From: Auanema rhodensis
Lineage: Eukaryota; Animalia; Nematoda
NCBI GenBank assembly: GCA_964057225.1
Contig: OZ059898.1
Location: 4,960,001 to 5,024,000 of the forward strand
Direction: 5' to 3'
Length of the DNA stretch: 64,000 bases
The notes beneath the pieces are model-generated. The model had not been told where the DNA came from. It searched no databases and worked only from the letters and a program-made list of their open reading frames with translations. The translations under genes and the position numbers were made by a program. This document shows, in pieces, positions 5,901 to 30,300 of the stretch; the stretch's first letter is position 1; every line of letters starts with the position of its first letter.

Positions 5901-6331
5901 GAGAGGTGAGAAATTTTCTGAGGAATCCATCATAATAATCACATCGGCCTGTTAATATTCATATTTTAATTTCAATTGAAGTACCAAAAATTATTACTTC
6001 GTAGTCGATTTTTTCACATGCTCTAGGACTATTAAAGGAATTAGTGGTTTTCCTAGGAACCCATGTCATTTGTGTTGTTGGAGTATTTGGGAATTTCTAT
6101 AACAACGTTGAATGTATTAAATTAACATGTTTCATTCTTACTTGACAAATAATATCCGCAATTGGGCCAAGTTTTTCGGAATCGGTGCCTCTCCATTTGT
6201 CGATGAGAAGAATGTTTGATGATTGTGTTATTTTGGAGTTTTCAGCCCTACTGAGTTCATCACCTGCGTCGACAATGAAAATTTCTGCATTAATATCTTT
6301 CAATGCTTTGACAGCTTCATCCACTTCATCT
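2936..6331 (-). CDS. dig-1: dig-1 C-terminal exons: end of VWA2, VWA3, VWA4, FN3-like module, Cys-rich segment, EGF_CA, tail
   Basis: Examples: 6331-6142, 6096-5998, 5948-5806 ([13 protein letters not shown]...VRIGFVIYS), VWA4 start [19 protein letters not shown] exon ~3218-3080, last exon 3029-2936 ([30 protein letters not shown]). Confidence 0.85.
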
Positions 6332-9300
6332 CTACAAAACATATGTTGACTGTTACAATTGAAAATATTAAACATACATAGATTTTCCATTTTTCATTAT
6401 TATGACAACTTTATTCATTCCTTGACTTCCCGAAAGAGCAAATTCTCCTGCAGTTTCTCTAAGCGCTGAACCAAGATAAGGTTTTCCTTTAAGTCTTCTT
6501 GTTTCACTTATAATGGTGACCAATTGTTCAGTCGAACCATAGTCTCCTAATGAAATAGGAATTTCCGCATTTTCACCGTATTTCACCAAGCCGACTCGTA
6601 CGCGGTTTATTCCCAGGTTAAAATGCTCGAGAAGAAAACTTTTAATGATCTCTTTCATTATTCTATAATCTAAGACTTTCACACTGTTGGATGTATCCAT
6701 TACAATGATTAATTCTAAACTAGAAGAGACTCTGCAGAAAGACGAAGGTTTACGGTATACATATCTATCAGTACTATCTGTAGAAAGTATTTCTCCATTC
6801 ATAGAGTCAAGAGGTAGGCCATCACTATTAGTTGGAATTAAAGTACCATCGGATTGTGTATATGCGCCAGTTGAATCTGTTGGAAGATTTATTCCATCAG
6901 AGCCAACAACCACATAATACGGACGACTAGTAGTTACCATGCTATTATAAATAAAAAAGCCATTTTTATCCAAAGGAAGAATGTTCCCATCAGCTCCTAA
7001 TGGTTTGCCATTTTGATCTCTTGCTATTGGCAACCCGTCAGTACCAACATGTTGACCAGAAACATCAGTTGGAAGTGGGTTTCCATCTGGACTGACAACT
7101 GGGTAGATAACATTTCCTGATTCGTCAGTTGGTAATCCCTTAGTAGTTGATTCTTCGGAATCTGGTGAGCTGGATGGGTAGATGTAGTTTCCTGTAGCAT
7201 CAGTTGGTAGAACTTCTCCATCAGGTCCCAGTGGTTTTCCTTCATCGTCAGTTGGAACGATTGAACCATCAGCAGCAACATGTTGACCAGAAGCATCAGT
7301 TGGAAGTGGACTTCCATCTGGTCCAATAACAGGGTAGATAACATTTCCTGATTCGTCAGTTGGTAATTGCTTCGTTGTGGATTCTTCGGAATCTGGTGAG
7401 CTGGATGGGTAGATGTAGTTACCGGAAGCATCAGTTGGTAGAACTTCTCCATTAGGTCCGAGTGGTTTTCCTTCTTCGTCAGTTGGAACGATTGAACCGT
7501 CAACAGCAACATGTTGACGAGAAGCATCAGTTGGAAGTGGACTTCCATCTGGACCAATAACTGGGTAGATAACATTTCCGGATTCATCAGTTGGTAATTG
7601 CTTAGTTGTGGATTCTTCGGAATCTGGTGAGCTGGATGGGTAGATGTAGTTACCGGAAGCATCAGTTGGTAGAACTTCTCCATCAGGTCCGAGTGGTTTT
7701 CCTTCTTCGTCAGTTGGAACGATTGAACCGTCAACAGCAACATGTTGACGAGAAGCATCAGTTGGAAGTGGACTTCCATCTGGACCAATAACAGGGTAGA
7801 TAACATTTCCGGATTCATCAGTTGGTAATTGCTTCGTTGTGGATTCTTCGGAATCTGGTGAACTGGATGGGTAGATATAGTTTCCTGTAGCATCAGTTGG
7901 TAGAACTTCTCCATCAGGTCCAAGTGGTTTTCCTTCGTCGTCAGTTGGAACGATTGAACCGTCAGCAGCAACATGTTGACCAGAATCATCAGTTGGAAGT
8001 GGACTTCCATCTGGTCCAATAACTGGGTAGATAACATTTCCTGATTCGTCAGTTGGTAATCCCTTAGTAGTTGATTCTTCGGAATCTGGTGAACTGGGTG
8101 GATAGATGTAATTTCCGGAAGCATCAGTTGGGAGAACTTCTCCATCAGGTCCGAGTGGTTTTCCTTCATCATCAGTTGGAACGATTGAACCATCAGCAGC
8201 AACATGTTGACCAGAAGCATCAGTTGGAAGTAGACTTCCATCTGGACCAATGACTGGGTAGATAACATTTCCTGATTCATCAGTTGGTAATTGCTTAGTT
8301 GTGGATTCTTCCGAATCTGGTGAGCTGGATGGGTGGATGTAGTTTCCGGAAGCATCAGTAGGGAGAACTTCTCCATCAGGTCCGAGTGGTTTTCCTTCAT
8401 CATCAGTTAAAACGATTGAACCATCAGCAGCAACATGTTGACCAGAAGCATCAGTTGGAAGTGGACTTCCATCTGGACCAATGACTGGGTAGATAACATT
8501 TCCTGATTCGTCAGTTGGTAATTCCTTAGTTGTGGATTCTTCGGAATCTGGTGAACTGGATGGGTGGATGTAGTTTCCGGAAGCATCAGTAGGGAGAACT
8601 TCTCCATCAGGTCCGAGCGGCTTTCCTTCATCATCAGTTGGAACGATTGAACCATCAGCAGCAACATGTTGACCAGAAGCATCAGTTGGAAGTGGACTTC
8701 CATCTGGACCAATGACTGGGTAGATAACATTTCCTGATTCGTCAGTTGGTAATTCCTTAGTAGTTGATTCTTCGGAGTCTAGTGAGCTGGATGGGTAGAT
8801 GTAGTTACCGGAAGCATCAGTAGGGAGAACTTCACCATCAGGTCCCAGTGGTTTTCCTTCATCGTCAGTTAAAACGATTGAACCGTCAGCAGCAACATGT
8901 TGACCAGAATCATCAGTTGGAAGTGGACTTCCATCTGGACCAATAACTGGGTAGATAACATTTCCGGATTCATCAGTTGGTAATTGCTTAGTTGTAGATT
9001 CTTCCGAATCTGGTGAGCTGGATGGGTAGATGTAGTTACCGGAAGCATCAGTTGGGAGAACTTCTCCATCCGGTCCGAGTGGTTTTCCTTCTTCGTCAGT
9101 TGGAACGATTGAACCGTCAGCAGCAACATGTTGACCAGAAGTATCAGTTGGAAGTGGACTTCCATCTGGACCAATAACTGGGTAGATAACATTTCCGGAT
9201 TCATCAGTTGGTAATTCCTTAGTTGTGGATTCTTCGGAATCTGGGGAACTGGATGGGTAAATGTAGTTTCCGGAAGAATCAGTAGGGAGAACTTCTCCAT

Positions 9301-12300
9301 CAGGTCCGAGTGGTTTTCCTTCGTCGTCAGTTGGAACGATTGAACCGTCAGCAGCAACATGTTGACCAGAATCATCAGTTGGAAGTGGACTTCCATCTGG
9401 ACCAATAACTGGGTAGATAACATTTCCGGATTCATCAGTTGGTAATTGCTTAGTTGTGGATTCTTCCGAATCTGGTGAGCTGGATGGGTAGATGTAGTTA
9501 CCGGAAGCATCAGTTGGGAGAACTTCTCCATCAGGTCCGAGTGGTTTTCCTTCTTCTTCAGTTGGAACGGTTGAACCGTCAGCAGCAACATGTTGACCAG
9601 AAGTATCAGTTGGAAGTGGACTTCCATCTGGACCAATAACTGGGTAGATAACATTTCCGGATTCATCAGTTGGTAATTGCTTAGTTGTAGATTCTTCCGA
9701 ATCTGGTGAGCTGGATGGGTAGATGTAGTTACCGGAAGCATCAGTAGGGAGAACTTCACCATCAGGTCCCAGTGGTTTTCCTTCATCGTCAGTTAAAACG
9801 ATTGAACCGTCAGCAGCAACATGTTGACCAGAATCATCAGTTGGAAGTGGACTTCCATCTGGACCAATAACTGGGTAGATAACATTTCCGGATTCATCAG
9901 TTGGTAATTGCTTAGTTGTAGATTCTTCCGAATCTGGTGAGCTGGATGGGTAGATGTAGTTACCGGAAGCATCAGTTGGGAGAACTTCTCCATCCGGTCC
10001 GAGTGGTTTTCCTTCTTCGTCAGTTGGAACGATTGAACCGTCAGCAGCAACATGTTGACCAGAAGTATCAGTTGGAAGTGGACTTCCATCTGGACCAATA
10101 ACTGGGTAGATAACATTTCCGGATTCATCAGTTGGTAATTCCTTAGTTGTGGATTCTTCGGAATCTGGGGAACTGGATGGGTAAATGTAGTTTCCGGAAG
10201 AATCAGTTGGGAGAACTTCACCATCAGGTCCGAGTGGTTTTCCTTCGTCGTCAGTTGGAACGATTGAACCGTCAGCAGCAACATGTTGACCAGAATCATC
10301 AGTTGGAAGTGGACTTCCATCTGGACCAATAACTGGGTAGATAACATTTCCGGATTCATCAGTTGGTAATTGCTTAGTTGTGGATTCTTCGGAATCTGGG
10401 GAACTGGATGGGTAAATGTAGTTTCCTGTAGCATCAGTTGGGAGAACTTCTCCATCAGGTCCGAATGGTTTTCCTTCGTCGTCAGTTGGAACGATTGAAC
10501 CATCAGCAGCAACATGTTGACCAGAAGCATCAGTTGGAAGTGGACTTCCATCTGGACCAATAACTGGGTAGATAACATTTCCGGATTCATCAGTTGGTAA
10601 TTCCTTTGCTTCGTTGATATCTTCCAATGGTACGTTAACATAACGTCCAGAATTATCTGTAGGGAGAGGTGAACCATCTTCACCCAGTGGGTGACCAGTA
10701 GCATCAGTAGGAATAACTTGGCCATCAGGACCTATATAAGCTCCACTATCATCTGTTGGAAGTGGAGTACCGTCTGGTCCCACTACAGCAATAGGTGCTG
10801 TTTCCGTAACTTCGGCTTTTTCGGCTTCGGAATCTGGTGAACTGGATGGGTAGATGTAGTTTCCGGAAGCATCAGTTGGGAGAACTTCACCATCAGGTCC
10901 GAGTGGTTTTCCTTCTTCGTCAGTTGGAACGATTGAACCGTCAGCAGCAACATGTTGACCAGAAGTATCAGTTGGAAGTGGACTTCCATCTGGACCAATA
11001 ACTGGGTAGATAACATTTCCGGATTCATCAGTTGGTAATTCCTTAGTTGTGGATTCTTCGGAATCTGGGGAACTGGATGGGTAGATGTAGTTTCCGGAAG
11101 CATCAGTAGGGAGAACTTCTCCATCAGGTCCGAGCGGCTTTCCTTCATCATCAGTTGGAACGATTGAACCATCAGCAGCAACATGTTGACCAGAAGCATC
11201 AGTTGGAAGTGGACTTCCGTCTGGACCCACAACTGGGTAGATAACATTTCCTGATTCGTCAGTTGGTAATTCCTTAGTACTTGATTCTTCGGAATCTGGT
11301 GAACTGGATGGGTAGATGTAGTTTCCGGAAGCATCAGTTGGGAGAACTTCACCATTAGATCCGAGTGGTTTTCCTTCATCGTCAGTTGGAACGATTGAAC
11401 CATCAGCAGCAACATGTTGACCAGAAGCATCAGTTGGAAGTGGACTGCCATCTGGGCCAATGACTGGGTAGATAACATTTCCTGATTCGTCGGTTGGTAA
11501 TTCCTTTGCTTTAGTGATATCTTCCATTGGTACATTAACATAACGTCCAGAATTATCTGTAGGGAGAGGTGAACCATCTTCACCCAGTGGGTGACCACTA
11601 GCATCAGTAGGAATAACTTGGCCATCAGGACCTATATAAGCTCCACTATCATCTGTTGGAAGTGGAGTACCGTCTGGTCCCACTATAGCAATAGGTGCTG
11701 TTTCCGTAACTTCGGCTTTTTCGGCTTCGGAATCTGGTGAACTGGATGGGTAGATGTAGTTTCCGGAAGCATCAGTTGGGAGAACTTCACCATCAGGTCC
11801 GAGTGGTTTTCCTTCGTCGTCAGTTGGAATGATTGAACCATCAGCAGCAACATGTTGACCAGAAGCATCAGTTGGAAGTGGACTTCCGTCTGGACCCACA
11901 ACTGGGTAGATAACATTTCCTGATTCGTCAGTTGGTAATTCCTTAGTACTTGATTCTTCGGAATCTGGTGAACTGGATGGGTAGATGTAGTTTCCGGAAG
12001 CATCAGTTGGGAGAACTTCACCATCAGGTCCGAGTGGTTTTCCTTCGTCGTCAGTTGGAATGATTGAACCATCAGCAGCAACATGTTGACCAGAAGCATC
12101 AGTTGGAAGTGGACTTCCGTCTGGACCCACAACTGGGTAGATAACATTTCCGGATTCATCAGTTGGTAATTGCTTAGTTGTGGATTCTTCGGAATCTGGG
12201 GAACTGGATGGGTAAATGTAGTTTCCTGTAGCATCAGTTGGGAGAACTTCTCCATCAGGTCCGAATGGTTTTCCTTCGTCGTCAGTTGGAACGATTGAAC

Positions 12301-15300
12301 CATCAGCAGCAACATGTTGACCAGAAGCATCAGTTGGAAGTGGACTTCCATCTGGACCAATAACTGGGTAGATAACATTTCCGGATTCATCAGTTGGTAA
12401 TTCCTTTGCTTCGTTGATATCTTCCAATGGTACGTTAACATAACGTCCAGAATTATCTGTAGGGAGAGGTGAACCATCTTCACCCAGTGGGTGACCAGTA
12501 GCATCAGTAGGAATAACTTGGCCATCAGGACCTATATAAGCTTCACTATCATCTGTTGGAAGTGGAGTACCGTCTGGTCCCACTACAGCAATAGGTGCTG
12601 TTTCCGTAACTTCGGCTTTTTCGGCTTCGGAATCTGGTGAACTGGATGGGTAGATGTAGTTTCCGGAAGCATCAGTTGGGAGAACTTCACCATCAGGTCC
12701 GAGTGGTTTTCCTTCTTCGTCAGTTGGAACGATTGAACCGTCAGCAGCAACATGTTGACCAGAAGTATCAGTTGGAAGTGGACTTCCATCTGGACCAATA
12801 ACTGGGTAGATAACATTTCCGGATTCATCAGTTGGTAATTCCTTAGTTGTGGATTCTTCGGAATCTGGGGAACTGGATGGGTAGATGTAGTTTCCGGAAG
12901 CATCAGTAGGGAGAACTTCTCCATCAGGTCCGAGCGGCTTTCCTTCATCATCAGTTGGAACGATTGAACCATCAGCAGCAACATGTTGACCAGAAGCATC
13001 AGTTGGAAGTGGACTTCCGTCTGGACCCACAACTGGGTAGATAACATTTCCTGATTCGTCAGTTGGTAATTCCTTAGTACTTGATTCTTCGGAATCTGGT
13101 GAACTGGATGGGTAGATGTAGTTTCCGGAAGCATCAGTTGGGAGAACTTCACCATTAGATCCGAGTGGTTTTCCTTCATCGTCAGTTGGAACGATTGAAC
13201 CATCAGCAGCAACATGTTGACCAGAAGCATCAGTTGGAAGTGGACTGCCATCTGGGCCAATGACTGGGTAGATAACATTTCCTGATTCGTCGGTTGGTAA
13301 TTCCTTTGCTTTAGTGATATCTTCCATTGGTACATTAACATAACGTCCAGAATTATCTGTAGGGAGAGGTGAACCATCTTCACCCAGTGGGTGACCACTA
13401 GCATCAGTAGGAATAACTTGGCCATCAGGACCTATATAAGCTCCACTATCATCTGTTGGAAGTGGAGTACCGTCTGGTCCCACTATAGCAATAGGTGCTG
13501 TTTCCGTAACTTCGGCTTTTTCGGCTTCGGAATCTGGTGAACTGGATGGGTAGATGTAGTTTCCGGAAGCATCAGTTGGGAGAACTTCACCATCAGGTCC
13601 GAGTGGTTTTCCTTCGTCGTCAGTTGGAATGATTGAACCATCAGCAGCAACATGTTGACCAGAAGCATCAGTTGGAAGTGGACTTCCGTCTGGACCCACA
13701 ACTGGGTAGATAACATTTCCTGATTCGTCAGTTGGTAATTCCTTAGTACTTGATTCTTCGGAATCTGGTGAACTGGATGGGTAGATGTAGTTTCCGGAAG
13801 CATCAGTTGGGAGAACTTCACCATCAGGTCCGAGTGGTTTTCCTTCGTCGTCAGTTGGAACGATTGAACCATCAGCAGCAACATGTTGACCAGAAGCATC
13901 AGTTGGAAGTGGACTTCCGTCTGGACCCACAACTGGGTAGATAACATTTCCTGATTCGTCAGTTGGTAATTCCTTAGTACTTGATTCTTCGGAATCTGGT
14001 GAACTGGATGGGTAGATGTAGTTTCCGGAAGCATCAGTTGGGAGAACTTCACCATCAGGTCCGAGTGGTTTTCCTTCGTCGTCAGTTGGAACGATTGAAC
14101 CATCAGCAGCAACATGTTGACCAGAAGCATCAGTTGGAAGTGGACTTCCGTCTGGACCCACAACTGGGTAGATAACATTTCCTGATTCGTCAGTTGGTAA
14201 TTCCTTAGTACTTGATTCTTCGGAATCTGGTGAACTGGATGGGTAGATGTAGTTTCCGGAAGCATCAGTTGGGAGAACTTCACCATCAGGTCCGAGTGGT
14301 TTTCCTTCGTCGTCAGTTGGAACGATTGAACCATCAGCAGCAACATGTTGACCAGAAGCATCAGTTGGAAGTGGACTTCCGTCTGGACCCACAACTGGGT
14401 AGATAACATTTCCTGATTCGTCAGTTGGTAATTCCTTAGTACTTGATTCTTCGGAATCTGGTGAACTGGATGGGTAGATGTAGTTTCCGGAAGCATCAGT
14501 TGGGAGAACTTCACCATCAGGTCCGACTGGTTTTCCTTCGTCGTCAGTTGGAACGATTGAACCATCAGCAGCAACATGTTGACCAGAAGCATCAGTTGGA
14601 AGTGGACTTCCGTCTGGACCCACAACTGGGTAGATAACATTTCCTGATTCGTCGGTTGGTAATTCCTTTGCTTCAGTGATATCTTCCATTGGTACATTAA
14701 CATAACGTCCAGAATTATCTGTAGGGAGAGGTGAACCATCTTCACCCAGTGGGTGACCACTAGCATCAGTAGGAATAACTTGGCCATCAGGACCTATATA
14801 AGCTCCACTATCATCTGTTGGAAGTGGAGTACCGTCTGGTCCCACTACAGCAATAGGTGCTGTTTCCGTAACCTCGGCTTTTTCGGCTTCGGAATCTGGT
14901 GAACTGGATGGGTAGATGTAGTTTCCGGAAGCATCAGTTGGGAGAACTTCTCCATCAGGTCCGAGTGGTTTTCCTTCGTCGTCAGTTGGAACGATTGAAC
15001 CATCAGCAGCAACATGTTGACGAGAAGCATCAGTTGGAAGTGGACTTCCGTCTGGACCCACAACTGGGTAGATAACATTTCCTGATTCGTCAGTTGGTAA
15101 TTCCTTAGTACTTGATTCTTCGGAATCTGGTGAACTGGATGGGTAGATGTAGTTTCCGGAAGCATCAGTTGGGAGAACTTCACCATCAGGTCCGAGTGGT
15201 TTTCCTTCGTCGTCAGTTGGAACGATTGAACCATCAGCAGCAACATGTTGACCAGAAGCATCAGTTGGAAGTGGACTTCCGTCTGGACCCACAACTGGGT

Positions 15301-18300
15301 AGATAACATTTCCTGATTCATCAGTTGGTAATTCCTTAGTACTTGATTCTTCGGAATCTGGTGAACTGGATGGGTAGATGTAGTTTCCGGAAGCATCAGT
15401 TGGGAGAACTTCACCATCAGGTCCGAGTGGTTTTCCTTCGTCGTCAGTTCGAACGATTGAACCATCAGCAGCAACATGTTGACCAGAAGCATCAGTTGGA
15501 AGTGGTCTTCCGTCTGGATCCACAACTGGGTAGATAACATTTCCTGATTCGTCAGTTGGTAATTCCTTTGCTTCAGTGATATCTTCCATTGGTACATTAA
15601 CATAACGTCCAGAATTATCTGTAGGGAGAGGTGAACCATCTTCACCCAGTGGGTGACCACTAGCATCAGTAGGAATAACTTGGCCATCAGGACCTATATA
15701 AGCTCCACTATCATCTGTTGGAAGTGGAGTACCGTCTGGTCCCACTACAGCAATAGGTGCTGTTTCCGTAACTTCGGCTTTTTCAGCTTCGGAATCTGGT
15801 GAACTGGATGGGTAGATGTAGTTTCCGGAAGCATCAGTTGGGAGAACTTCACCATCAGGTCCGAGTGGTTTTCCTTCATCGTCAGTTGGAACGATTGAAC
15901 CATCAGCAGCAACATGTTGACCAGAAGCATCAGTTGGAAGTGGACTGCCATCTGGGCCAATGACTGGGTAGATAACATTTCCTGATTCGTCAGTTGGTAA
16001 TTCCTTTGTTTCGTTGATATCTTCCAATGGTACGTTAACATAACGTCCAGAATTATCTGTAGGGAGAGGTGAACCATCTTCACCCAGTGGGTGACCACTA
16101 GCATCAGTAGGAATAACTTGGCCATCAGGACCTATATAAGCTCCACTATCATCTGTTGGAAGGGGAGTACCGTCTGGTCCCAATACAGCAATAGGTGCTG
16201 TTTCCGTAACTTCGCCTTTTTCGGCTTCGGAATCTGGTGAACTGGATGGGTAGATGTAGTTTCCGGAAGCATCAGTTGGGAGAACTTCTCCATCAGGTCC
16301 GAGTGGTTTTCCTTCGTCGTCAGTTGGAACGATTGAACCATCAGCAGCAACATGTTGACCAGAAGCATCAGTTGGAAGTGGACTTCCGTCTGGACCCACA
16401 ACTGGGTAGATAACATTTCCTGATTCGTCAGTTGGTAATTCCTTAGTACTTGATTCTTCGGAATCTGGTGAACTGGATGGGTAGATGTAGTTTCCGGAAG
16501 CATCAGTTGGGAGAACTTCACCATCAGGTCCGACTGGTTTTCCTTCGTCGTCAGTTGGAACGATTGAACCATCAGCAGCAACATGTTGACCAGAAGCATC
16601 AGTTGGAAGTGGACTTCCGTCTGGACCCACAACTGGGTAGATAACATTTCCTGATTCGTCAGTTGGTAATTCCTTAGTACTTGATTCTTCGGAATCTGGT
16701 GAACTGGATGGGTAGATGTAGTTTCCGGAAGCATCAGTTGGGAGAACTTCTCCATCAGGTCCGAGCGGCTTTCCTTCATCATCAGTTGGAACGATTGAAC
16801 CATCAGCAGCAACATGTTGACCAGAAGCATCAGTTGGAAGTGGACTTCCGTCTGGACCCACAACTGGGTAGATAACATTTCGTGATTCGTCAGTTGGTGA
16901 TTCCTTCGTAGTTGATTCTTCGGAATCTGATGAACCGGATGGGTAGATGTAGTTTCCGGAAGCATCAGTTGGGAGAACTTCACCATCAGGTCCGAGTGGT
17001 TTTCCTTCGTCGTCAGTTGGAACGATTGAACCATCAGCAGCAACATGTTGACCAGAAGCATCAGTTGGAAGTGGACTTCCGTCTGGACCCACAACTGGGT
17101 AGATAACATTTCCTGATTCATCAGTTGGTAATTCCTTAGTACTTGATTCTTCGGAATCTGGTGAACTGGATGGGTAGATGTAGTTTCCGGAAGCATCAGT
17201 TGGGAGAACTTCACCATCAGGTCCGAGTGGTTTTCCTTCGTCGTCAGTTCGAACGATTGAACCATCAGCAGCAACATGTTGACCAGAATCATCAGTTGGA
17301 AGTGGACTTCCGTCTGGACCCACAACTGGGTAGATAACATTTCCTGATTCGTCAGTTGGTAATTCCTTTGCTTCAGTGATACCTTCCATTGGTACATTAA
17401 CATAACGTCCAGAATTATCTGTAGGGAGAGGTGAACCATCTTCACCCAGTGGGTGACCACTAGCATCAGTAGGAATAACTTGGCCATCAGGACCTATATA
17501 AGCTCCACTATCATCTGTTGGAAGTGGAGTACCGTCTGGTCCCACTACAGCAATAGGTGCTGTGTCCGTAACTTCGGCTTTTTCGGCTTCGGAATCTGGT
17601 GAACTGGATGGGTAGATGTAGTTTCCGGAAGCATCAGTTGGGAGAACTTCACCATCAGATCCGAGTGGTTTTCCTTCATCGTCAGTTGGAACGATTGAAC
17701 CATCAGCAGCAACATGTTGACCAGACGCATCAGTTGGAAGTGGACTGCCATCTGGGCCAATGACTGGGTAGATAACATTTCCTGATTCGTCAGTTGGTAA
17801 TTCCTTTGCTTCGTTGATATCTTCCAATGGTACGTTAACATAACGTCCAGAATTATCTGTAGGGAGAGGTGAACCATCTTCACCCAGTGGGTGACCACTA
17901 GCATCAGTAGGAATAACTTGGTCATCACGACCTATATAAGCTCCACTATCATCTGTTGGAAGTGGAGTACCGTCTGGTCCCACTACAGCAATAGGTGCTG
18001 TTTCCGTAACTTCGGCTTTTTCGGCTTCGGAATCTGGTGAACTGGATGGGTAGATGTAGTTTCCGGAAGCATCAGTTGGGAGAACTTCACCATCAGGTCC
18101 GAGTGGTTTTCCTTCGTCGTCAGTTGGAACGATTGAACCATCAGCAGTAACATGTTGACCAGAAGCATCAGTTGGAAGTGGACTTCCATCTGGTCCAACA
18201 ACTGGGTAGATAACATTTCCTGATTCGTCAGTTGGTAATTCCTTAGTACTTGATTCTTCGGAATCTGGTGAACTGGATGGGTAGATGTAGTTTCCGGAAG

Positions 18301-21300: not shown

Positions 21301-24300
21301 CATCAGGTCCGAGTGGTTTTCCTTCGTCGTCAGTTGGAACGATTGAACCATCAGCAGCAACATGTTGACCAGAAGCATCAGTTGGAAGTGGACTTCCGTC
21401 TGGACCCACAACTGGGTAGATAACATTTCCTGATTCGTCAGTTGGTGATTCCTTCGTAGTTGATTCTTCGGAATCTGGTGAACTGGATGGGTAGATGTAG
21501 TTTCCGGAAGCATCAGTTGGGAGAACTTCACCATCAGGTCCGAGTGGTTTTCCTTCGTCGTCAGTTGGAACGATTGAACCATCAGCAGCAACATGTTGAC
21601 CAGAAGCATCAGTTGGAAGTGGACTTCCATCTGGACCAATAACTGGGTAGATAACATTTCCTGATTCGTCAGTTGGTAATTCCTTAGTACTTGATTCTTC
21701 GGAATCTGGTGAACTGGATGGGTAGATGTAGTTTCCGGAAGCATCAGTTGGGAGAACTTCTCCATCAGGTCCGAGCGGCTTTCCTTCATCATCAGTTGGA
21801 ACGATTGAACCATCAGCAGCAACATGTTGACCAGAAGCATCAGTTGGAAGTGGACTTCCATCTGGACCAATAACTGGGTAGATAACATTTCCTGATTCGT
21901 CAGTTGGTAATTCCTTAGTACTTGATTCTTCGGAATCTGGTGAACTGGATGGGTAGATGTAGTTTCCGGAAGCATCAGTTGGGAGAACTTCTCCATCAGG
22001 TCCGAGCGGCTTTCCTTCATCATCAGTTGAAACGATTGAACCATCAGCAGCAACATGTTGACCAGAAGCATCAGTTGGAAGTGGACTTCCGTCTGGACCC
22101 ACAACTGGGTAGATAACATTTCCTGATTCGTCAGTTGGTAATTCCTTAGTACTTGATTCTTCGGAATCTGGTGAACTGGATGGGTAGATGTAGTTTCCGG
22201 AAGCATCAGTTGGGAGAACTTCTCCATCAGGTCCGAGCGGCTTTCCTTCATCATCAGTTGGAACGATTGAACCATCAGCAGCAACATGTTGACCAGAAGC
22301 ATCAGTTGGAAGTGGACTTCCGTCTGGACCCACAACTGGGTAGATAACATTTCCTGATTCGTCAGTTGGTGATTCCTTCGTAGTTGATTCTTCGGAATCT
22401 GGTGAACTGGATGGGTAGATGTAGTTTCCGGAAGCATCAGTTGGGAGAACTTCACCATCAGGTCCGAGTGGTTTTCCTTCGTCGTCAGTTGGAACGATTG
22501 AACCATCAGCAGCAACATGTTGACCAGAAGCATCAGTTGGAAGTGGACTTCCGTCTGGACCCACAACTGGGTAGATAACATTTCCTGATTCGTCAGTTGG
22601 TAATTCCTTTGCTTCAGTGATATCTTCCATTGGTACATTAACATAACGTCCAGAATTATCTGTAGGGAGAGGTGAACCATCTTCACCCAGTGGGTGACCA
22701 CTAGCATCAGTAGGAATAACTTGGCCATCAGGACCTATATAAGCTCCACTATCATCTGTTGGAAGTGGAGTACCGTCTGGTCCCACTACAGCAATAGGTG
22801 CTGTTTCCGTAACTTTGGCTTTTTCGGCTTCGGAATCTGGTGAACTGGATGGGTAAATGTAGTTTCCGGAAGCATCAGTTGGGAGAACTTCACCATCAGG
22901 TCCGAGTGGTTTTCCTTCGTCGTCAGTTGGAACGATTGAACCATCAGCAGCAACATGTTGACCAGAAGCATCAGTTGGAAGTGGACTTCCGTCTGGACCC
23001 ACAACTGGGTAGATAACATTTCCTGATTCGTCAGTTGGTAATTCCTTTGCTTCAGTGATATCTTCCATTGGTACATTAACATAACGTCCAGAATTATCTG
23101 TAGGGAGAGGTGAACCATCTTCACCCAGTGGGTGACCACTAGCATCAGTAGGAATAACTTGGCCATCAGGACCTATATAAGCTCCACTATCATCTGTTGG
23201 AAGTGGAGTACCGTCTGGTCCCACTACAGCAATAGGTGCTGTTTCCGTAACTTCGGCTTTTTCGGCTTCGGAATCTGGTGAACTGGATGGGTAGATGTAG
23301 TTTCCGGAAGCATCAGTTGGGAGAACATCACCATCAGATCCGAGTGGTTTTCCTTCATCGTCAGTTGGAACGATTGAACCATCAGCAGCAACATGTTGAC
23401 CAGAAGCATCAGTTGGAAGTGGACTTCCATCTGGACCAATAACTGGGTAGATAACATTTCCTGATTCGTCAGTTGGTAATTCCTTAGTACTTGATTCTTC
23501 GGAATCTGGTGAACTGGATGGGTAGATGTAGTTTCCGGAAGCATCAGTTGAGAGAACTTCACCATCAGGTCCGAGTGGTTTTCCTTCGTCGTCAGTTGGA
23601 ACGATTGAACCATCAGCAGCAACATGTTGACCAGAAGCATCAGTTGGAAGTGGACTTCCATCTGGTCGAACAACTGGGTAGATAACATTTCCTGATTCGT
23701 CAGTTGGTAATTCCTTAGTACTTGATTCTTCGGAATCTGGTGAACTGGATGGGTAGATGTAGTTTCCGGAAGCATCAGTTGGGAGAACTTCACCATCAGG
23801 TCCGAGTGGTTTTCCTTCGTCGTCAGTTGGAACGATTGAACCATCAGCAGCAACATGTTGACCAGAAGCATCAGTTGGAAGTGGACTTCCGTCTGGACCC
23901 ACAACTGGGTAGATAACATTTCCTGATTCGTCAGTTGGTAATTCCTTATCACTTGATTCTTCGGAATCTGGTGAACTGGATGGGTAGATGTAGTTTCCGG
24001 AAGCATCCGTTGGGAGAACTTCACCATCAGGTCCGAGTGGTTTTCCTTCGTCGTCAGTTGGAACGATTGAACCATCAGCAGCAACATGTTGACCAGAAGC
24101 ATCAGTTGGAAGTGGACTTCCATCTGGACCCACAACTGGGTAGATAACATTTCCTGATTCATCAGTTGGTAATTCCTTTGCTTCAGTGATATCTTCCATT
24201 GGTACATTAACATAACGTCCAGAATTATCTGTAGGGAGAGGTGAACCATCTTCACCCAGTGGGTGACCACTAGCATCAGTAGGAATAACTTGGCCATCAG

Positions 24301-27300
24301 GACCTATATAAGCTCCACTATCATCTGTTGGAAGTGGAGTACCGTCTGGTCCCACTACAGCAATAGGTGCTGTTTCCGTAACTTCGGCTTTTTCGGCTTC
24401 GGAATCTGGTGAACTGGATGGGTAGATGTAGTTTCCGGAAGCATCAGTTGGGAGAACTTCACCATCAGGTCCGAGTGGTTTTCCTTCGTCGTCAGTTGGA
24501 ACGATTGAACCATCAGCAGCAACATGTTGACCAGAAGCATCAGTTGGAAGTGGACTTCCATCTGGACCCACAACTGGGTAGATGACATTTCCGGATTCGT
24601 CTGTAGGCAATTGCTCAGTAGCAGATTCGACAGAATCTGGTGAACTGGATGGGTAGATATAGTTACCCAAAGCATCGGTAGGGAGCACTTCTCCATCAGG
24701 TCCGAGCGGCTTTCCTTCATCATCAGTTGGAACGATTGAACCATCAGCAGCAACATGTTGACCAGAAGCATCAGTTGGAAGTGGACTTCCATCTGGTCCA
24801 ACAACTGGGTAGATAACATTTCCTGATTCGTCAGTTGGTAATTCCTTAGTACTTGATTCTTCGGAATCTGGTGAACTGGATGGGTAGATGTAGTTTCCGG
24901 AAGCATCAGTTGAGAGAACTTCACCATCAGGTCCGAGTGGTTTTCCTTCGTCGTCAGTTGGAACGATTGAACCATCAGCAGCAACATGTTGACCAGAAGC
25001 ATCAGTTGGAAGTGGACTTCCATCTGGTCCAACAACTGGGTAGATAACATTTCCTGATTCATCAGTTGGTAATTCCTTAGTACTTGATTCTTCGGAATCT
25101 GGTGAACTGGATGGGTAGATGTAGTTTCCGGAAGCATCAGTTGGGAGAACTTCACCATCAGGTCCGAGTGGTTTTCTTTCGTCGTCAGTTGGAACGATTG
25201 AACCATCAGCAGCAACATGTTGACCAGAAGCATCAGTTGGAAGTGGACTTCCGTCTGGACCCACAACTGGGTAGATAACATTTCCTGATTCATCAGTTGG
25301 TAATTCCTTAGTACTTGATTCTTCGGAATCTGGTGAACTGGATGGGTAGATGTAGTTTCCGGAAGCATCAGTTGGGAGAACTTCACCATCAGGTCCGAGT
25401 GGTTTTCCTTCGTCGTCAGTTGGAACGATTGAACCATCAGCAGCAACATGTTGACCAGAAGCATCAGTTGGAAGTGGACTTCCATCTGGTCCAACAACTG
25501 GGTAGATAACATTTCCTGATTCATCAGTTGGTAATTCCTTAGTACTTGATTCTTCGGAATCTGGTGAACTGGATGGGTAGATGTAGTTTCCGGAAGCATC
25601 AGTTGGGAGAACTTCACCATCAGGTCCGAGTGGTTTTCCTTCGTCGTCAGTTGGAACGATTGAACCATCAGCAGCAACATGTTGACCAGAAGCATCAGTT
25701 GGAAGTGGACTTCCATCTGGTCCAACAACTGGGTAGATAACATTTCCTGATTCATCAGTTGGTAATTCCTTAGTACTTGATTCTTCGGAATCTGGTGAAC
25801 TGGATGGGTAGATGTAGTTTCCGGAAGCATCAGTTGGGAGAACTTCACCATCAGGTCCGAGTGGTTTTCTTTCGTCGTCAGTAGGAACGATTGAACCATC
25901 AGCAGCAACATGTTGACCAGAAGCATCAGTTGGAAGTGGACTTCCGTCTGGACCCACAACTGGGTAGATAACATTTCCTGATTCATCAGTTGGTAATTCC
26001 TTAGTACTTGATTCTTCGGAATCTGGTGAACTGGATGGGTAGATGTAGTTTCCGGAAGCATCAGTTGGGAGAACTTCACCATCAGGTCCGAGTGGTTTTC
26101 CTTCGTCGTCAGTTGGAACGATTGAACCATCAGCAGCAACATGTTGACCAGAAGCATCAGTTGGAAGTGGACTTCCATCTGGTCCAACAACTGGGTAGAT
26201 AACATTTCCTGATTCATCAGTTGGTAATTCCTTAGTACTTGATTCTTCGGAATCTGGTGAACTGGATGGGTAGATGTAGTTTCCGGAAGCATCAGTTGGG
26301 AGAACTTCACCATCAGGTCCGAGTGGTTTTCCTTCGTCGTCAGTTGGAACGATTGAACCATCAGCAGCAACATGTTGACCAGAAGCATCAGTTGGAAGTG
26401 GACTTCCATCTGGTCCAACAACTGGGTAGATAACATTTCCTGATTCATCAGTTGGTAATTCCTTTGCTTCAGTGATATCTTCCATTGGTACATTAACATA
26501 ACGTCCAGAATTATCTGTAGGGAGAGGTGAACCATCTTGACCAAGTGGGTGACCACTAGCATCAGTAGGAATAACTTGGCCATCAGGACCTATATAAGCT
26601 CCACTATCATCTGTTGGAAGTGGAGTACCGTCTGGTCCCACTACAGCAATAGGTGCTGTTTCCGTAACTTCGGCTTTTTCGGCTTCGGAATCTGGTGAAC
26701 TGGATGGGTAGATGTAGTTTCCGGAAGCATCAGTTGGGAGAACTTCACCATCAGGTCCGAGTGGTTTTCCTTCGTCGTCAGTTGGAACGATTGAACCATC
26801 AGCAGCAACATGTTGACCAGAAGCATCAGTTGGAAGTGGACTTCCGTCTGGACCCACAACTGGGTAGATAACATTTCCTGATTCATCAGTTGGTAATTCC
26901 TTAGTACTTGATTCTTCGGAATCTGGTGAACTGGATGGGTAGATGTAGTTTCCGGAAGCATCAGTTGGGAGAACTTCACCATCAGGTCCGAGTGGTTTTC
27001 CTTCGTCGTCAGTTGGAACGATTGAACCATCAGCAGCAACATGTTGACCAGAAGCATCAGTTGGAAGTGGACTCCCATCTGGTCCAACAACTGGGTAGAT
27101 AACATTTCCTGATTCATCAGTTGGTAATTCCTTAGTACTTGATTCTTCGGAATCTGGTGAACTGGATGGGTAGATGTAGTTTCCGGAAGCATCAGTTGGG
27201 AGAACTTCACCATCAGGTCCGAGTGGTTTTCCTTCGTCGTCAGTTGGAACGATTGAACCATCAGCAGCAACATGTTGACCAGAAGCATCAGTTGGAAGTG

Positions 27301-30300
27301 GACTCCCATCTGGTCCAACAACTGGGTAGATAACATTTCCTGATTCATCAGTTGGTAATTCCTTAGTACTTGATTCTTCGGAATCTGGTGAACTGGATGG
27401 GTAGATGTAGTTTCCGGAAGCATCAGTTGGGAGAACTTCACCATCAGGTCCGAGTGGTTTTCCTTCGTCGTCAGTTGGAACGATTGAACCATCAGCAGCA
27501 ACATGTTGACCAGAAGCATCAGTTGGAAGTGGACTTCCGTCTGGACCCACAACTGGGTAGATAACATTTCCTGATTCGTCAGTTGGTAATTCCTTAGTAC
27601 TTGATTCTTCGGAATCTGGTGAACTGGATGGGTAGATGTAGTTTCCGGAAGCATCAGTTGGGAGAACTTCACCATCAGGTCCGAGTGGTTTTCCTTCGTC
27701 GTCAGTCGGAACGATTGAACCATCAGCAGCAACATGTTGACCAGAAGCATCAGTTGGAAGTGGACTTCCATCTGGTCCAACAACTGGGTAGATAACATTT
27801 CCTGATTCATCAGTTGGTAATTCCTTTGTTTCAGTGATATCTTCCATTGGTACATTAACATAACGTCCAGAATTATCTGTAGGGAGAGGTGAACCATCTT
27901 GACCAAGTGGGTGACCACTAGCATCAGTAGGAATAACTTGGCCATCAGGACCTAGGTAAGCTCCACTATCATCTGTTGGAAGTGGAGTACCGTCTGGTCC
28001 AAGCACACTCATTTTAGGGTAAGATTCTGATTGTTTTTCTTGTTCATGTGATTGGTTCGTTGTTGGTTGATGTACAGTTTGTTCCTTTATTCTTTCAAAA
28101 ACTAGTCCTTGTCTTTTGCATATTTCAATCATTTTATCTCTGATTGCGTTTTCTTGTTTCACTTCAGAGATCAGCATAGTAATGGTATTAGAAATATGCA
28201 TTTGTATCCTAAAATTACATAGATTGCTGGCATTGCCATGAAAAATCAAAAAATACTCACCTAGGTGTTTGTTGTGTTAAGAAGATTACAATCCTCTGAC
28301 AATCTGCACGCTTGAAAGTGCTGAATTGCTGCATTACTGCTCCTTCGATTTCAGTTTCTTTTGATTCAGTTCTTGGTCTAAATTCACTTTCACCTGCTAG
28401 AATAGATTTAAGGTGTTCTTTCTCTTGATATCCGCCCAGAGGTAAAGGCACAATTATTTGGTCGCCGACCAACAGAACACCTAGTCGAGTCACATCCGGC
28501 GAAAGATCCAGTTGACCAGTAAGTTTTCGAATAGCTTTTAAGGAACTTTTATAGAAAGCTTCATCCAATCCATTATCAACAACAACAATTATATCAGCTT
28601 TCATTCCCTTTATATCACATTCATCCGTTGCCAATGAATTGGTTTCTTGCTCATTTGTTATGGTTCCAACAGCAGGATAGTTGTACTTTCCGGACATATC
28701 CGTGGGGAGAACTTCTCCATCAGCTCCGAGTGGCTTTCCTTCATCGTCTGTGGGAACGATAGAACCGTCAGCAGCAACATGTTGACCAGAAGCATCAGTT
28801 GGAAGTGGACTTCCATCTGGACCAATAACTGGGTAGATGACATTTCCGGATTCGTCTGTAGGCAATTCCTTAGTCGTGGATTCTTCGGAATCTGGTGTAC
28901 TGGATGGGTAGATATAGTTTCCGGAAGCATCCGTTGGGAGAACTTCTCCATCAGGTCCGAGTGGCTTTCCTTCATCGTCAGTTGGAACGATAGAACCGTC
29001 AGCAGCAACATGTTGACCAGAAGCATCAGTTGGAAGTGGACTTCCATCTGGTCCAACAACTGGGTAGATAACATTTCCGGATTCGTCTGTAGGCAATTGC
29101 TCAGTAGCAGATTCGACAGAATCTGGTGAACTGGATGGGTATATATAGTTACCCGAAGCATCGATAGGGAGCACTTCTCCATCAGGTCCGAGTGGTTTTC
29201 CTTCGTCGTCAGTTGGAACGATTGAACCATCAGCAGCAACATGTTGACCAGAAGTATCAGTTGGAAGTGGACTTCCATCTGGACCCACAACTGGGTAGAT
29301 GACATTTCCGGATTCATCAGTTGGTAATTCCTTTGCTTCGGTGATATCTTCCATTGGTACATTAACATAACGTCCAGTATTATCTGTAGGGAGAGGTGAA
29401 CCATCTTGACCAAGTGGGTGACCACTAGCATCAGTAGGAATTACTTGGCCATCAGGTCCAAGGTAAGCTCCACTATCATCTGTTGGAAGTGCAGTACCGT
29501 CTGGTCCCACTACAGCAAAAGGTGTTGTCTGCGTGACTTCTGTCTTTTCGGCTTCGGAATCTCGTGAACTAGATGGGTAGATGTAGTTTCCGGAAGCATC
29601 CGTTGGGAGCACTTCTCCATCAGGTCCGAGTGGTTTTCCATCGTCGTCAGTTGGAACGATTGAACCGTCAGCAGCGACATGTTGACCAGAAGCCTCAGTT
29701 GGAAGTGGACTTCCATCTGGTCCAACAACTGGGTAGATAACATTTCCTGATTCATCAGTTGGTAATTCCTTAGATGTGGATTCTTCTGAATCTGGTGAGC
29801 TGGATGGGTAGATGTAGTTTCCGGAAGCATCAGTTGGGAGCACTTCTCCATCAGGTCCGATTGGCTTTCCGTCATCGTCAGTTGGAACGATTGAACCGTC
29901 AGCAGCGACATGTTGACCAGAAGCATCAGTTGGAAGTGGACTTCCATCTGGTCCAACAACTGGGTAGATAACATTTCCGGATTCGTCTGTAGGCGATTGC
30001 TCAGTAGCAGATTCGACAGAATCTGGTGAACTGGATGGGTAGATATAGTTACCCAAAGCATCAGTTGGGAGAACTTCTCCATCAGGTCCGAGTGGTTTTC
30101 CTTCGTCGTCAGTTGGAACGATTGAACCGTCAGCAGTGACATGTTGTCCAGAAGCATCAGTTGGAAGTGGACTTCCATCAGGTCCAACAACTGGGTAGAT
30201 AACATTTCCTGAATCATCAGTTGGTAATTCCTTTGCTTCGGTGATATCTTCCATTGGTACATGAACATAACGTCCAGTATTATCTGTAGGGAGAAGTGAA

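What the first reader, a model, noticed from the sequence alone, without database searches (positions are those of the whole stretch)
6378..28208. The 21.8-kb exon is a seamless cassette: skipping it would delete 7,277 aa and rebuild an intact chimeric VWA1/VWA2 domain
Seen: exon B is 21,831 nt (divisible by 3, phase 2-2), and both of its boundaries sit at the homologous VWA position. Joining donor 28261 to acceptor 6331 (or to 5302 or 4337) keeps the frame and completes a VWA fold. Inference: the gene structure permits a splicing-based length switch, giving roughly full-length versus half-length matrix tethers with different VWA/MIDAS complements. The sequence shows that this is possible, not that it occurs. 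The short (52- and 46-nt) flanking introns favour constitutive inclusion.
Basis: inference. Interest (0 to 1): 0.75.

Follow-up and report, generated by a model that had tools for sequence, protein, structure and literature searches.

The report
Giant repeat exon of nematode DIG-1
The 21.8-kb exon is real and could be skipped in frame, but that follows automatically from an old intron shared by all four VWA domains of this worm's DIG-1 (mesocentin) matrix gene, and nothing found here suggests it is ever skipped.

Summary
On the minus strand, exon B runs 28208..6378. It is 21,831 nt (7,277 codons), one open frame, phase 2 at both ends, flanked by canonical GT..AG introns of 52 and 46 nt. Both introns cut a VWA domain at the same column, about Pfam VWA position 115 of 174.

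The gene is the single-copy nematode orthologue of DIG-1/mesocentin. All four of its VWA domains carry a phase-2 intron at this column, five residues after the T of the 'TDG' motif. The VWA1 orthologue in Thelazia callipaeda has it too. So the in-frame "cassette" property is inherited from the ancestral VWA module and is not special to this exon.

Exon B encodes about 93 near-identical tandem units: 78 of 77 aa and 15 of a 69-aa variant. They are under purifying selection (pN/pS 0.25) and homogenised within each exon.

VWA1, a long spacer, then VWA2 is a conserved DIG-1 layout. The spacer is about 820–3,530 aa in other nematodes and about 7,100 aa here.

Brugia isoforms and an Ascaris cDNA all keep the spacer. 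VWA1 lacks a MIDAS motif and its N-half is only 26% identical to VWA2's, so an "intact" chimera is unproven.

Most likely this is a constitutive, length-variable spacer exon. No RNA data could be consulted. The scan had not reported this before on other DNA.

The parts
28261..41534 (-). Exon A (13,274 nt). It holds an N-terminal divergent PTD-type stretch, about 40 recognisable 77-aa units plus variant units, and then the N-half of VWA1.
   Evidence: ORF 28257..41480; acceptor TATAG|GTT read at 41535/41534; donor AG|GTGAGT at 28261/28260; unit count.
28262..28595 (-). VWA1 N-half. It has no MIDAS motif and is orthologous to the upstream lone VWA of other nematode DIG-1 proteins.
   Evidence: Pfam VWA profile 1-112, E 5.9e-05, 23.8 bits, which equals the gathering score. 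blastp to orthologues gives 27-36% identity at positions 820-3,530 aa upstream of their VWA2. Alignment.
28209..28260 (-). 52-nt phase-2 intron inside VWA1 (GTGAGT..TTTTAG).
   Evidence: Read. Same column and phase as the Thelazia callipaeda VWA1 intron (L001 28301-28461).
6378..28208 (-). Exon B: 21,831 nt, 7,277 codons, phase 2-2.
   Evidence: translation has no stop.
28070..28208 (-). VWA1 C-half. It is short (about 45 aa) and strongly diverged or eroded compared with orthologues.
   Evidence: No Pfam hit. No similarity to the VWA2 C-half. Alignment with 11 orthologues shows it about 15-20 aa shorter and lacking their conserved W-x-Q-L .. E-C motif.
7038..28006 (-). Tandem array inside exon B: 78 units of 77 aa (231 nt), 15 variant units of 69 aa, and degenerate terminal units.
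   Evidence: TRF reports period 231, 147 copies over 7038..40758 across both exons. Unit spacing, identities, pN/pS 0.25. Exact 1,317-nt duplicate at offset 1800 (10744-12060 and 12544-13860).
6378..6712 (-). VWA2 N-half, with a MIDAS-type D-T-S-N-S motif.
   Evidence: Pfam VWA profile 2-115, E 9.4e-15; 47-55% identical to VWA2 of DIG-1 orthologues.
6332..6377 (-). 46-nt phase-2 intron inside VWA2 (GTATGT..TTGTAG).
   Evidence: Read.
6142..6331 (-). Exon C: VWA2 C-half.
   Evidence: Read; blastp to orthologues, up to 50% identity.
5303..5518 (-). Phase-2 intron inside VWA3 at the same column (T-N-G-K-N, CG|GTAAGA .. TTCAG|A).
   Evidence: Read. The VWA3 exons are 61-84% identical to the Caenorhabditis tropicalis protein P0013.
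4338..4382 (-). 45-nt phase-2 intron inside VWA4 at the same column (S-D-G-T-S, AG|GTATAA .. TTTTAG|C).
   Evidence: Read.
3079..3273 (-). Calcium-binding EGF exon in the C-terminal part of the same gene.
   Evidence: Pfam EGF_CA 1.4e-07 and FXa_inhibition 1.5e-09.
42732..43346 (-). Upstream exon with FN3 and Ig domains (N-terminal adhesive region of the gene).
   Evidence: Pfam fn3 2.2e-09, ig 1.7e-06.

Best explanation
**What it is.** This is the DIG-1/mesocentin gene of a nematode, probably a clade V rhabditid. DIG-1 is a giant secreted matrix protein.

**Exon B.** It is a constitutively included exon. It encodes a roughly 7,100-aa spacer of near-identical 77-aa acidic units rich in Pro, Ser, Gly and Asp, lying between a lone, MIDAS-less VWA1 and the C-terminal VWA2-VWA3-VWA4-EGF block.

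**Why it looks like a cassette.** There are two ordinary causes.
1. The ancestral VWA module of this gene carried a phase-2 intron five residues after the T of the 'TDG' motif. All four paralogous VWA domains and the orthologues inherited it, so any stretch between two such introns is 2-2 symmetric.
2. The stretch between them is an in-frame tandem array. It grows and shrinks by whole 231-nt or 207-nt units through unequal recombination.

**Splicing (inferred).** The two minimal introns of 52 and 46 nt are each recognised and removed on their own (intron definition), so the exon is included.

**Function (inferred).** The array acts as a long extended tether, possibly glycosylated, whose length is free to vary between species.
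For: **DIG-1 orthology.**
- The best hits are annotated mesocentin or BMA-DIG-1.
- The gene is single-copy in its own 181-Mb genome.
- FN3 and Ig domains lie upstream and EGF_CA downstream.

**Same intron in all four VWA domains.**
- All four share column and phase (Pfam coordinates).
- Thelazia callipaeda VWA1 has the same intron: T-D-G-Q-D, then AT|GTAAGT..TTTTAG|A.

**Conserved layout with a hypervariable spacer.**
- VWA1-to-VWA2 distance is about 820 aa in Globodera, 947 in Brugia malayi, 2,033 in Ascaris, 2,838 in Strongyloides ratti and 3,533 in S. stercoralis. It is about 7,100 aa here.

**Array dynamics.**
- The nearest neighbour of a unit is almost always in the same exon, and many units are 100% identical.
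- Exact runs of 1,401 nt and 1,317 nt are duplicated.

**Real coding sequence.**
- pN/pS among 87 distinct units is 0.25.

**No skipping in relatives.**
- Brugia malayi P0011, P0014 and P0015 all have a VWA1-VWA2 offset of 1,063 aa.
- P0030 aligns colinearly with P0011 over its full length at 99.5% identity.
- Ascaris suum F1KPH3 contains VWA1, the spacer and VWA2.

**Small introns.**
- Nearly all introns read in the 3' part of the gene are 40-52 nt.

**C. elegans precedent.**
- C. elegans DIG-1 also has 'characteristic 70 amino acid repeats', and an in-frame exon-29 deletion there is viable (PMC4199693).
Against: - No transcript data for this species were available, so constitutive inclusion is inferred, not shown.
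- VWA1's own C-half looks eroded while its N-half is still recognisably conserved. The constitutive model does not explain this.
- The copy number of a 34-kb array of near-identical units may not be exact in the assembly.
Confidence: 0.8

Rival explanations
1. Exon B is a regulated cassette: in some cells or stages donor 28261 is spliced to 6331 (or 5302 or 4337). This removes 7,277 aa and yields a shorter DIG-1 with a chimeric VWA, much as versican drops its giant GAG exons.
For: - The frame is kept for every donor/acceptor pair.
- VWA1's native C-half is short and eroded while its N-half is conserved. That would fit VWA1's N-half being paired with another C-half.
- An in-frame deletion inside the repeat region is tolerated in C. 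elegans, with a separable phenotype (PMC4199693).
Against: - The symmetry is fully explained by the shared ancestral intron.
- The flanking introns are 52 and 46 nt and leave no room for regulatory elements.
- Skipping would create a 21,929-nt intron in a gene whose local introns are 40-216 nt.
- No orthologue model, isoform or cDNA in the set lacks the spacer.
- The VWA1 and VWA2 N-halves are only 26% identical, and the C-halves show no similarity.
Confidence: 0.07
2. The exon is real, but its stated size is partly an assembly product: the number of near-identical units has been collapsed or inflated, so '21,831 nt' is not the true length.
For: - Many units are 100% identical.
- Exact duplicates of 1.3-1.4 kb lie 1.4-1.8 kb apart.
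- The array spans 34 kb, which is longer than many reads.
Against: - The assembly is highly contiguous (181 Mb in 112 contigs).
- The frame is unbroken over 7,277 codons.
- Units show an ordered gradient of variants rather than one collapsed consensus.
- Any miscount would be by whole in-frame units, so the phase argument is unaffected.
Confidence: 0.12
3. Exon B is not one exon. Small introns inside the array remove some units, so the mature mRNA is shorter than the open frame suggests.
For: In C. elegans the repeat region is cut into smaller exons; exon 29 is 145 aa (PMC4199693).
Against: - There is no stop codon in 21.8 kb.
- Units are under purifying selection throughout.
- The unit sequence is repeated intact with no intron-like AT-rich inserts, and GC stays at 0.45-0.47 across the array against about 0.3 outside it.
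Confidence: 0.03

Closest known systems
C. elegans DIG-1 (K07E12.1; 'mesocentin'), and its annotated orthologues in Brugia, Ascaris, Toxocara and Strongyloides
   Same: - Giant secreted matrix protein with N-terminal Ig/FN3 domains and EGF domains.
- A huge, poorly conserved central region with roughly 70-aa repeats.
- A C-terminal VWA cluster plus EGF (PMC8544517, PMC1904197, PMC4199693).
- A lone VWA1 ahead of a long spacer is shared with clade III and IV orthologues.
   Different: - The repeats here are 77 aa and nearly identical. They are packed into two giant exons of 13.3 and 21.8 kb, whereas C. elegans exon 29 is 145 aa.
- The VWA1-VWA2 spacer is 2 to 8 times longer than in any orthologue seen here.
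- VWA1 has lost the T-D-G motif and part of its C-half.
Versican GAG-alpha and GAG-beta exons (own knowledge, not tested here)
   Same: Very large symmetric exons that encode an unstructured, glycosylated spacer between adhesive end domains of a matrix protein.
   Different: - Versican skipping is documented, and its exons sit between long introns and between whole domains.
- Here the introns are 46-52 nt, they cut through VWA domains, and no skipping is documented.
Central tandem-repeat exons of mucins such as MUC4 and MUC16 (own knowledge)
   Same: - A single exon of 10-22 kb made of in-frame tandem repeats rich in Ser, Thr and Pro.
- Copy number changes by unequal recombination.
- The exon is constitutively included.
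   Different: - The units here are acidic (Asp plus Glu 19%) and Gly/Pro-rich, with acidic-x-Ser-Gly motifs rather than classic Thr-rich mucin repeats.
- One low-confidence single-sequence model suggests small beta-hairpin modules.
Collagen VI alpha-3 N-terminal VWA modules (own knowledge)
   Same: A matrix protein with many VWA domains, in which symmetric exons allow in-frame module skipping.
   Different: There each VWA is a whole exon and skipping removes whole domains. Here the intron lies inside the domain, so skipping would create chimeras.

Membership tests
DIG-1 / mesocentin orthologue group (Nematoda) | Significant sequence similarity of the VWA2-VWA3 region to annotated DIG-1/mesocentin proteins | tested here: met
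   23 hits, all nematode, with names that include Mesocentin and BMA-DIG-1; the VWA2 N-half is 47-55% identical, and the VWA3 exons are up to 84% identical to C. tropicalis.
DIG-1 / mesocentin orthologue group (Nematoda) | Domain order Ig/FN3 - EGF - long central repeats - VWA cluster - EGF | tested here: met
   fn3 plus ig at 42732-43346 and EGF_CA at 3079-3273. An EGF-like Cys pattern was read at 41560-41750. Repeats. VWA. The far N-terminus lies beyond the window and was not examined.
DIG-1 / mesocentin orthologue group (Nematoda) | Single-copy giant gene (more than 10,000 aa in C. elegans) | tested here: met
   There is one match to the VWA2 N-half in the whole 181-Mb assembly. Exons A and B alone encode about 11,700 aa.
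DIG-1 / mesocentin orthologue group (Nematoda) | Role in keeping neurons and glia in position | not testable with these tools
   This is known for C. elegans only (PMC8544517, PMC4199693).
VWA domain (PF00092) - VWA1 | Match to the family profile at the curated score | tested here: inconclusive
   The N-half alone scores 23.8 bits, which equals the gathering score of 23.8 (E 5.9e-05). The C-half gives no hit. The spliced whole domain was not scored, because the joined step was left out.
VWA domain (PF00092) - VWA1 | MIDAS metal site (D-x-S-x-S, and a T-D-G-type loop) | tested here: not met
   VWA1 reads D-N-G-L-D and T-Q-Q-T-P. VWA2 has D-T-S-N-S and VWA3 has D-S-S-E-N.
Alternatively spliced cassette exon | Symmetric phase and length divisible by 3 | tested here: met
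   21,831 nt, phase 2-2.
Alternatively spliced cassette exon | Transcripts both with and without the exon | not testable with these tools
   No RNA data were available for this species. In relatives, every isoform, model or cDNA seen keeps the spacer.
Alternatively spliced cassette exon | Flanking introns long or conserved enough to hold regulatory elements | tested here: not met
   The introns are 52 and 46 nt, at the minimal size typical of this gene.

The most novel reading that the evidence does not exclude
In this lineage VWA1 has kept a conserved N-half but lost a working C-half, because VWA1's N-half is used as a splice partner. A minority isoform would join donor 28261 to a downstream VWA acceptor (6331, 5302 or 4337). 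This would drop the 7,277-aa spacer and complete VWA1's N-half with a foreign C-half, giving a half-length DIG-1 in the manner of versican.
Probability: 0.05. Interest if true: 0.65.

Novelty: new member of a known kind. Interest (0 to 1): 0.25.

Why it matters
If the exon were skipped under regulation, it would be the largest known cassette exon. It would also give a simple way to tune the reach of a matrix tether that holds neurons and glia in place. As it stands, the finding shows how a shared intron position in duplicated domains makes any intervening exon look like a designed cassette, and that alone should not be read as evidence of alternative splicing. The more solid points of interest are modest:
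- This is one of the largest coding exons I know of in an animal gene.
- The VWA1-VWA2 spacer of DIG-1 varies nearly ninefold in length among nematodes while its flanking domains and introns stay fixed.

Tried and rejected
**Searches that found nothing useful**
- Pfam on all of exon A and on both ends of exon B found no family for the 77-aa unit. All hits were below cut-off.
- A Foldseek search of the PDB with a single-sequence AlphaFold model of three units gave nothing at E <= 0.001. The weak top rows were beta-hairpin repeat proteins (choline-binding, glucan-binding, CROP and Rhs repeats) with TM-scores below 0.15, so they are not evidence.
- A word search with the VWA1 N-half (exon A, region 4260-4406) found nothing. 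It was meant to find clade V proteins that contain VWA1.
- Literature searches for K07E12.1 and mesocentin found no paper on DIG-1 isoforms that skip the central region.

Intron positions of VWA2-4 in other species could therefore not be mapped; only Thelazia VWA1 was.

- The big HMMER search was not used, as the operators advised. The claim does not rest on an absence of relatives.
- This applies to native VWA1, native VWA2 and the chimeric VWA1/VWA2. All tests were done exon by exon, by reference.

**Readings considered and rejected**
- That the long ORFs in the other minus-strand frames within the array are genes. They are a by-product of stop-free repeats.
- That the contig is anything other than nematode. 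It is not human.
Full report
**1. The observation**

The gene lies on the minus strand. Reading the sequence directly:
- Exon A ends at 28261, followed by GTGAGT.
- A 52-nt intron ends in TTTTAG at 28209.
- Exon B runs from 28208 to 6378, followed by GTATGT.
- A 46-nt intron ends in TTGTAG at 6332, and the next exon starts at 6331.

Exon B is 21,831 nt, which is 7,277 codons. Both introns fall after the second base of a codon (phase 2). The exon lies inside a single 7,293-codon open frame, and its translation has no stop. The coordinates and arithmetic of the finding are therefore correct.

**2. Do the boundaries sit at the homologous VWA position?**

Yes. In Pfam, the last 140 aa of exon A match VWA profile positions 1-112 at residues 30-137. 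The last 140 aa of exon B match positions 2-115 at residues 30-140. Both exons end at about profile column 115 of 174.

Read by eye, the four domains end their N-halves as follows, each followed by a codon split 2+1:
- VWA1: T-Q-Q-T-P
- VWA2: K-N-G-K-S
- VWA3: T-N-G-K-N
- VWA4: S-D-G-T-S

That is five residues after the first residue of the 'TDG' loop that follows strand beta-4. All four VWA domains of the gene carry the same intron, not only the two that flank exon B.

**3. What the gene is**

A word search with the end of exon B returned 23 proteins, all from nematodes. Their names include Mesocentin (Ascaris, Toxocara, Bursaphelenchus, Acanthocheilonema) and BMA-DIG-1.

Further support for the DIG-1 architecture described in PMC8544517 and PMC1904197:
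- An upstream exon has FN3 and Ig domains, and a downstream exon has a calcium-binding EGF.
- The VWA2 N-half occurs once in the 181-Mb assembly.

The VWA3 exons are 61-84% identical to a Caenorhabditis tropicalis protein and less similar to all others. The species is therefore probably a clade V rhabditid, but it was not identified.

**4. The lone VWA1 and the spacer are conserved; the spacer's length is not**

blastp of the exon-level pieces against the orthologues finds a VWA1 orthologue well upstream of VWA2 in clade III and clade IV species. The alignment confirms orthology of the N-half.

| Species | VWA1-to-VWA2 distance (aa) |
|---|---|
| Globodera | about 820 |
| Brugia | about 950 |
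| Ascaris / Parascaris | about 2,030-2,170 |
| Strongyloides ratti | 2,838 |
| S. stercoralis | 3,533 |
| This window | about 7,100 |

The spacers in these species are likewise Cys-poor and contain P-T-D-like motifs.

**5. The intron is old**

In the one orthologous locus I could fetch (Thelazia callipaeda, L001), the VWA1 coding sequence is interrupted after T-D-G-Q-D. The junction reads AT|GTAAGT, then 161 nt, then TTTTAG|A. That is the same column and the same phase 2.

The intron therefore predates the split between that clade III lineage and this species. Because all four paralogous VWAs have it, it most simply goes back to the ancestral VWA module that was duplicated within the gene. Any exon or run of exons between two such introns must be 2-2 symmetric, and any donor/acceptor pairing must keep the frame and juxtapose complementary domain halves. 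The 'seamless cassette' is a consequence of this, not an independent signal.

**6. What exon B encodes**

TRF sees one 231-nt array of about 147 copies from 7038 to 40758, spanning both giant exons.

- **Unit content.** Exon B holds 78 units of 77 aa, 15 interspersed variant units of 69 aa, and degenerate terminal units.
- **Homogenisation.** Units are homogenised within each exon. The nearest neighbour of a unit is almost always in the same exon, and many units are 100% identical. Mean identity is 0.93 within B, 0.91 within A and 0.895 between them.
- **Recent duplications.** There are exact higher-order duplicates of 1,317 nt (exon B) and 1,401 nt (exon A). This is the signature of recent unequal recombination.
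- **Selection.** pN/pS among the 87 distinct units is 0.25, so the protein sequence is under selection.
- **Composition.** Pro 14%, Ser 12%, Gly 12%, Asp 11%. There are only two Cys in 7,276 residues. Of 268 Ser-Gly dipeptides, 266 follow an acidic residue.
- **Fold.** A single-sequence AlphaFold model of three units gave about 62 moderately confident residues per unit, with regularly spaced beta bridges separated by 12-residue low-confidence Ser/Glu-rich linkers. Only one of five models was confident, and no fold match was found. I treat this as a hint only.

**7. Would the chimera be 'intact'?**

This could not be tested.

Exon-level evidence argues for caution:
- VWA1 has no MIDAS motif.
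- Its N-half is 26% identical to VWA2's over 72 aa.
- The two C-halves have no detectable similarity.

An oddity remains. VWA1's own C-half is about 15-20 aa shorter than in 11 orthologues and lacks their conserved W-x-Q-L .. E-C motif, while its N-half is still conserved.

**8. Does skipping happen?**

There are no RNA data for this species in the tools. Indirect evidence is against it:
- The two flanking introns are of minimal size, like almost all introns in the 3' part of the gene (40-52 nt, one of 216 nt). This is the regime in which each intron is recognised on its own. That reading rests on established knowledge of nematode splicing, not on a test here.
- Skipping would need a 21,929-nt intron.
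- Three Brugia malayi forms (P0011, isoform f P0014 and isoform e P0015) have the same 1,063-aa VWA1-VWA2 offset. P0030 is colinear with P0011 at 99.5% identity.
- Ascaris suum entry F1KPH3, which to my knowledge is transcript-derived, contains VWA1, the spacer and VWA2. A second entry, F1KPH7, differs by about 285 aa inside the spacer repeats, not by loss of the spacer.
- In C. elegans, an in-frame loss of exon 29 (145 aa of the '70 amino acid repeats') comes from a mutation, not from normal splicing, and is viable (PMC4199693).

**9. Verdict**

The inference that the frame permits skipping is correct but trivial, because the same holds for every pair of VWA introns in this gene and, for the VWA1 intron at least, in Thelazia as well.

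The best explanation is a constitutive, evolutionarily length-variable spacer exon in a DIG-1 orthologue (confidence about 0.8). A regulated length switch remains possible at about 5-7%.

Noticed in passing
window 28070-28208 (-): VWA1's C-terminal half is about 15-20 aa shorter than in 11 orthologues. It lacks their conserved W-x-Q-L .. E-C motif and gives no Pfam or BLAST signal, while the N-half of the same domain is still conserved. It may be a decaying domain, or a very divergent one.
   Followed up: partly
window 7038-28006 (-), and exon A 28700-40520 (-): Exon B has 268 Ser-Gly dipeptides, and 266 of them follow an acidic residue within two positions (about three per 77-aa unit). There are only 2 N-x-S/T sequons and 2 Cys. 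This looks like a dense set of glycosaminoglycan-attachment-type sites, so DIG-1 here may be a giant proteoglycan.
   Followed up: no
window 10744-12060 = 12544-13860; 34518-35918 = 35904-37304: There are exact higher-order duplications of 1,317 nt (offset 1,800) and 1,401 nt (offset 1,386) inside the arrays. They are either very recent unequal crossovers or places where the assembly's copy number should be checked.
   Followed up: partly
window 27125-27817 (-): A single-sequence AlphaFold model of three units predicts a roughly 62-residue module of regularly spaced short beta bridges (pLDDT about 80-87) plus a 12-residue disordered acidic linker per unit. Only one of five models was confident, and the weak Foldseek rows were beta-hairpin solenoid repeats. 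The unit may be a small undescribed folded repeat rather than pure disorder.
   Followed up: partly
window 7024-27945 and 30410-38995 (-), other frames: There are many ORFs of 300-1,270 aa in the two other minus-strand frames inside the array. They are stop-free by-products of the repeat, not genes.
   Followed up: yes
proteins P0002 and P0035 (Ascaris suum F1KPH3 / F1KPH7): Two Ascaris mesocentin entries differ by about 285 aa inside the VWA1-VWA2 repeat spacer. The cause could be repeat-number variation, partial splicing inside the array or a transcript-assembly artefact; this was not resolved.
   Followed up: partly
I did not examine it.
   Followed up: no
window 41560-41750 (-): The exon just upstream of exon A reads as an EGF-like Cys-rich module (C-D-C .. 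C .. C-Y-C .. C). It ends with a donor at about 41583, before a 48-nt intron.
   Followed up: no
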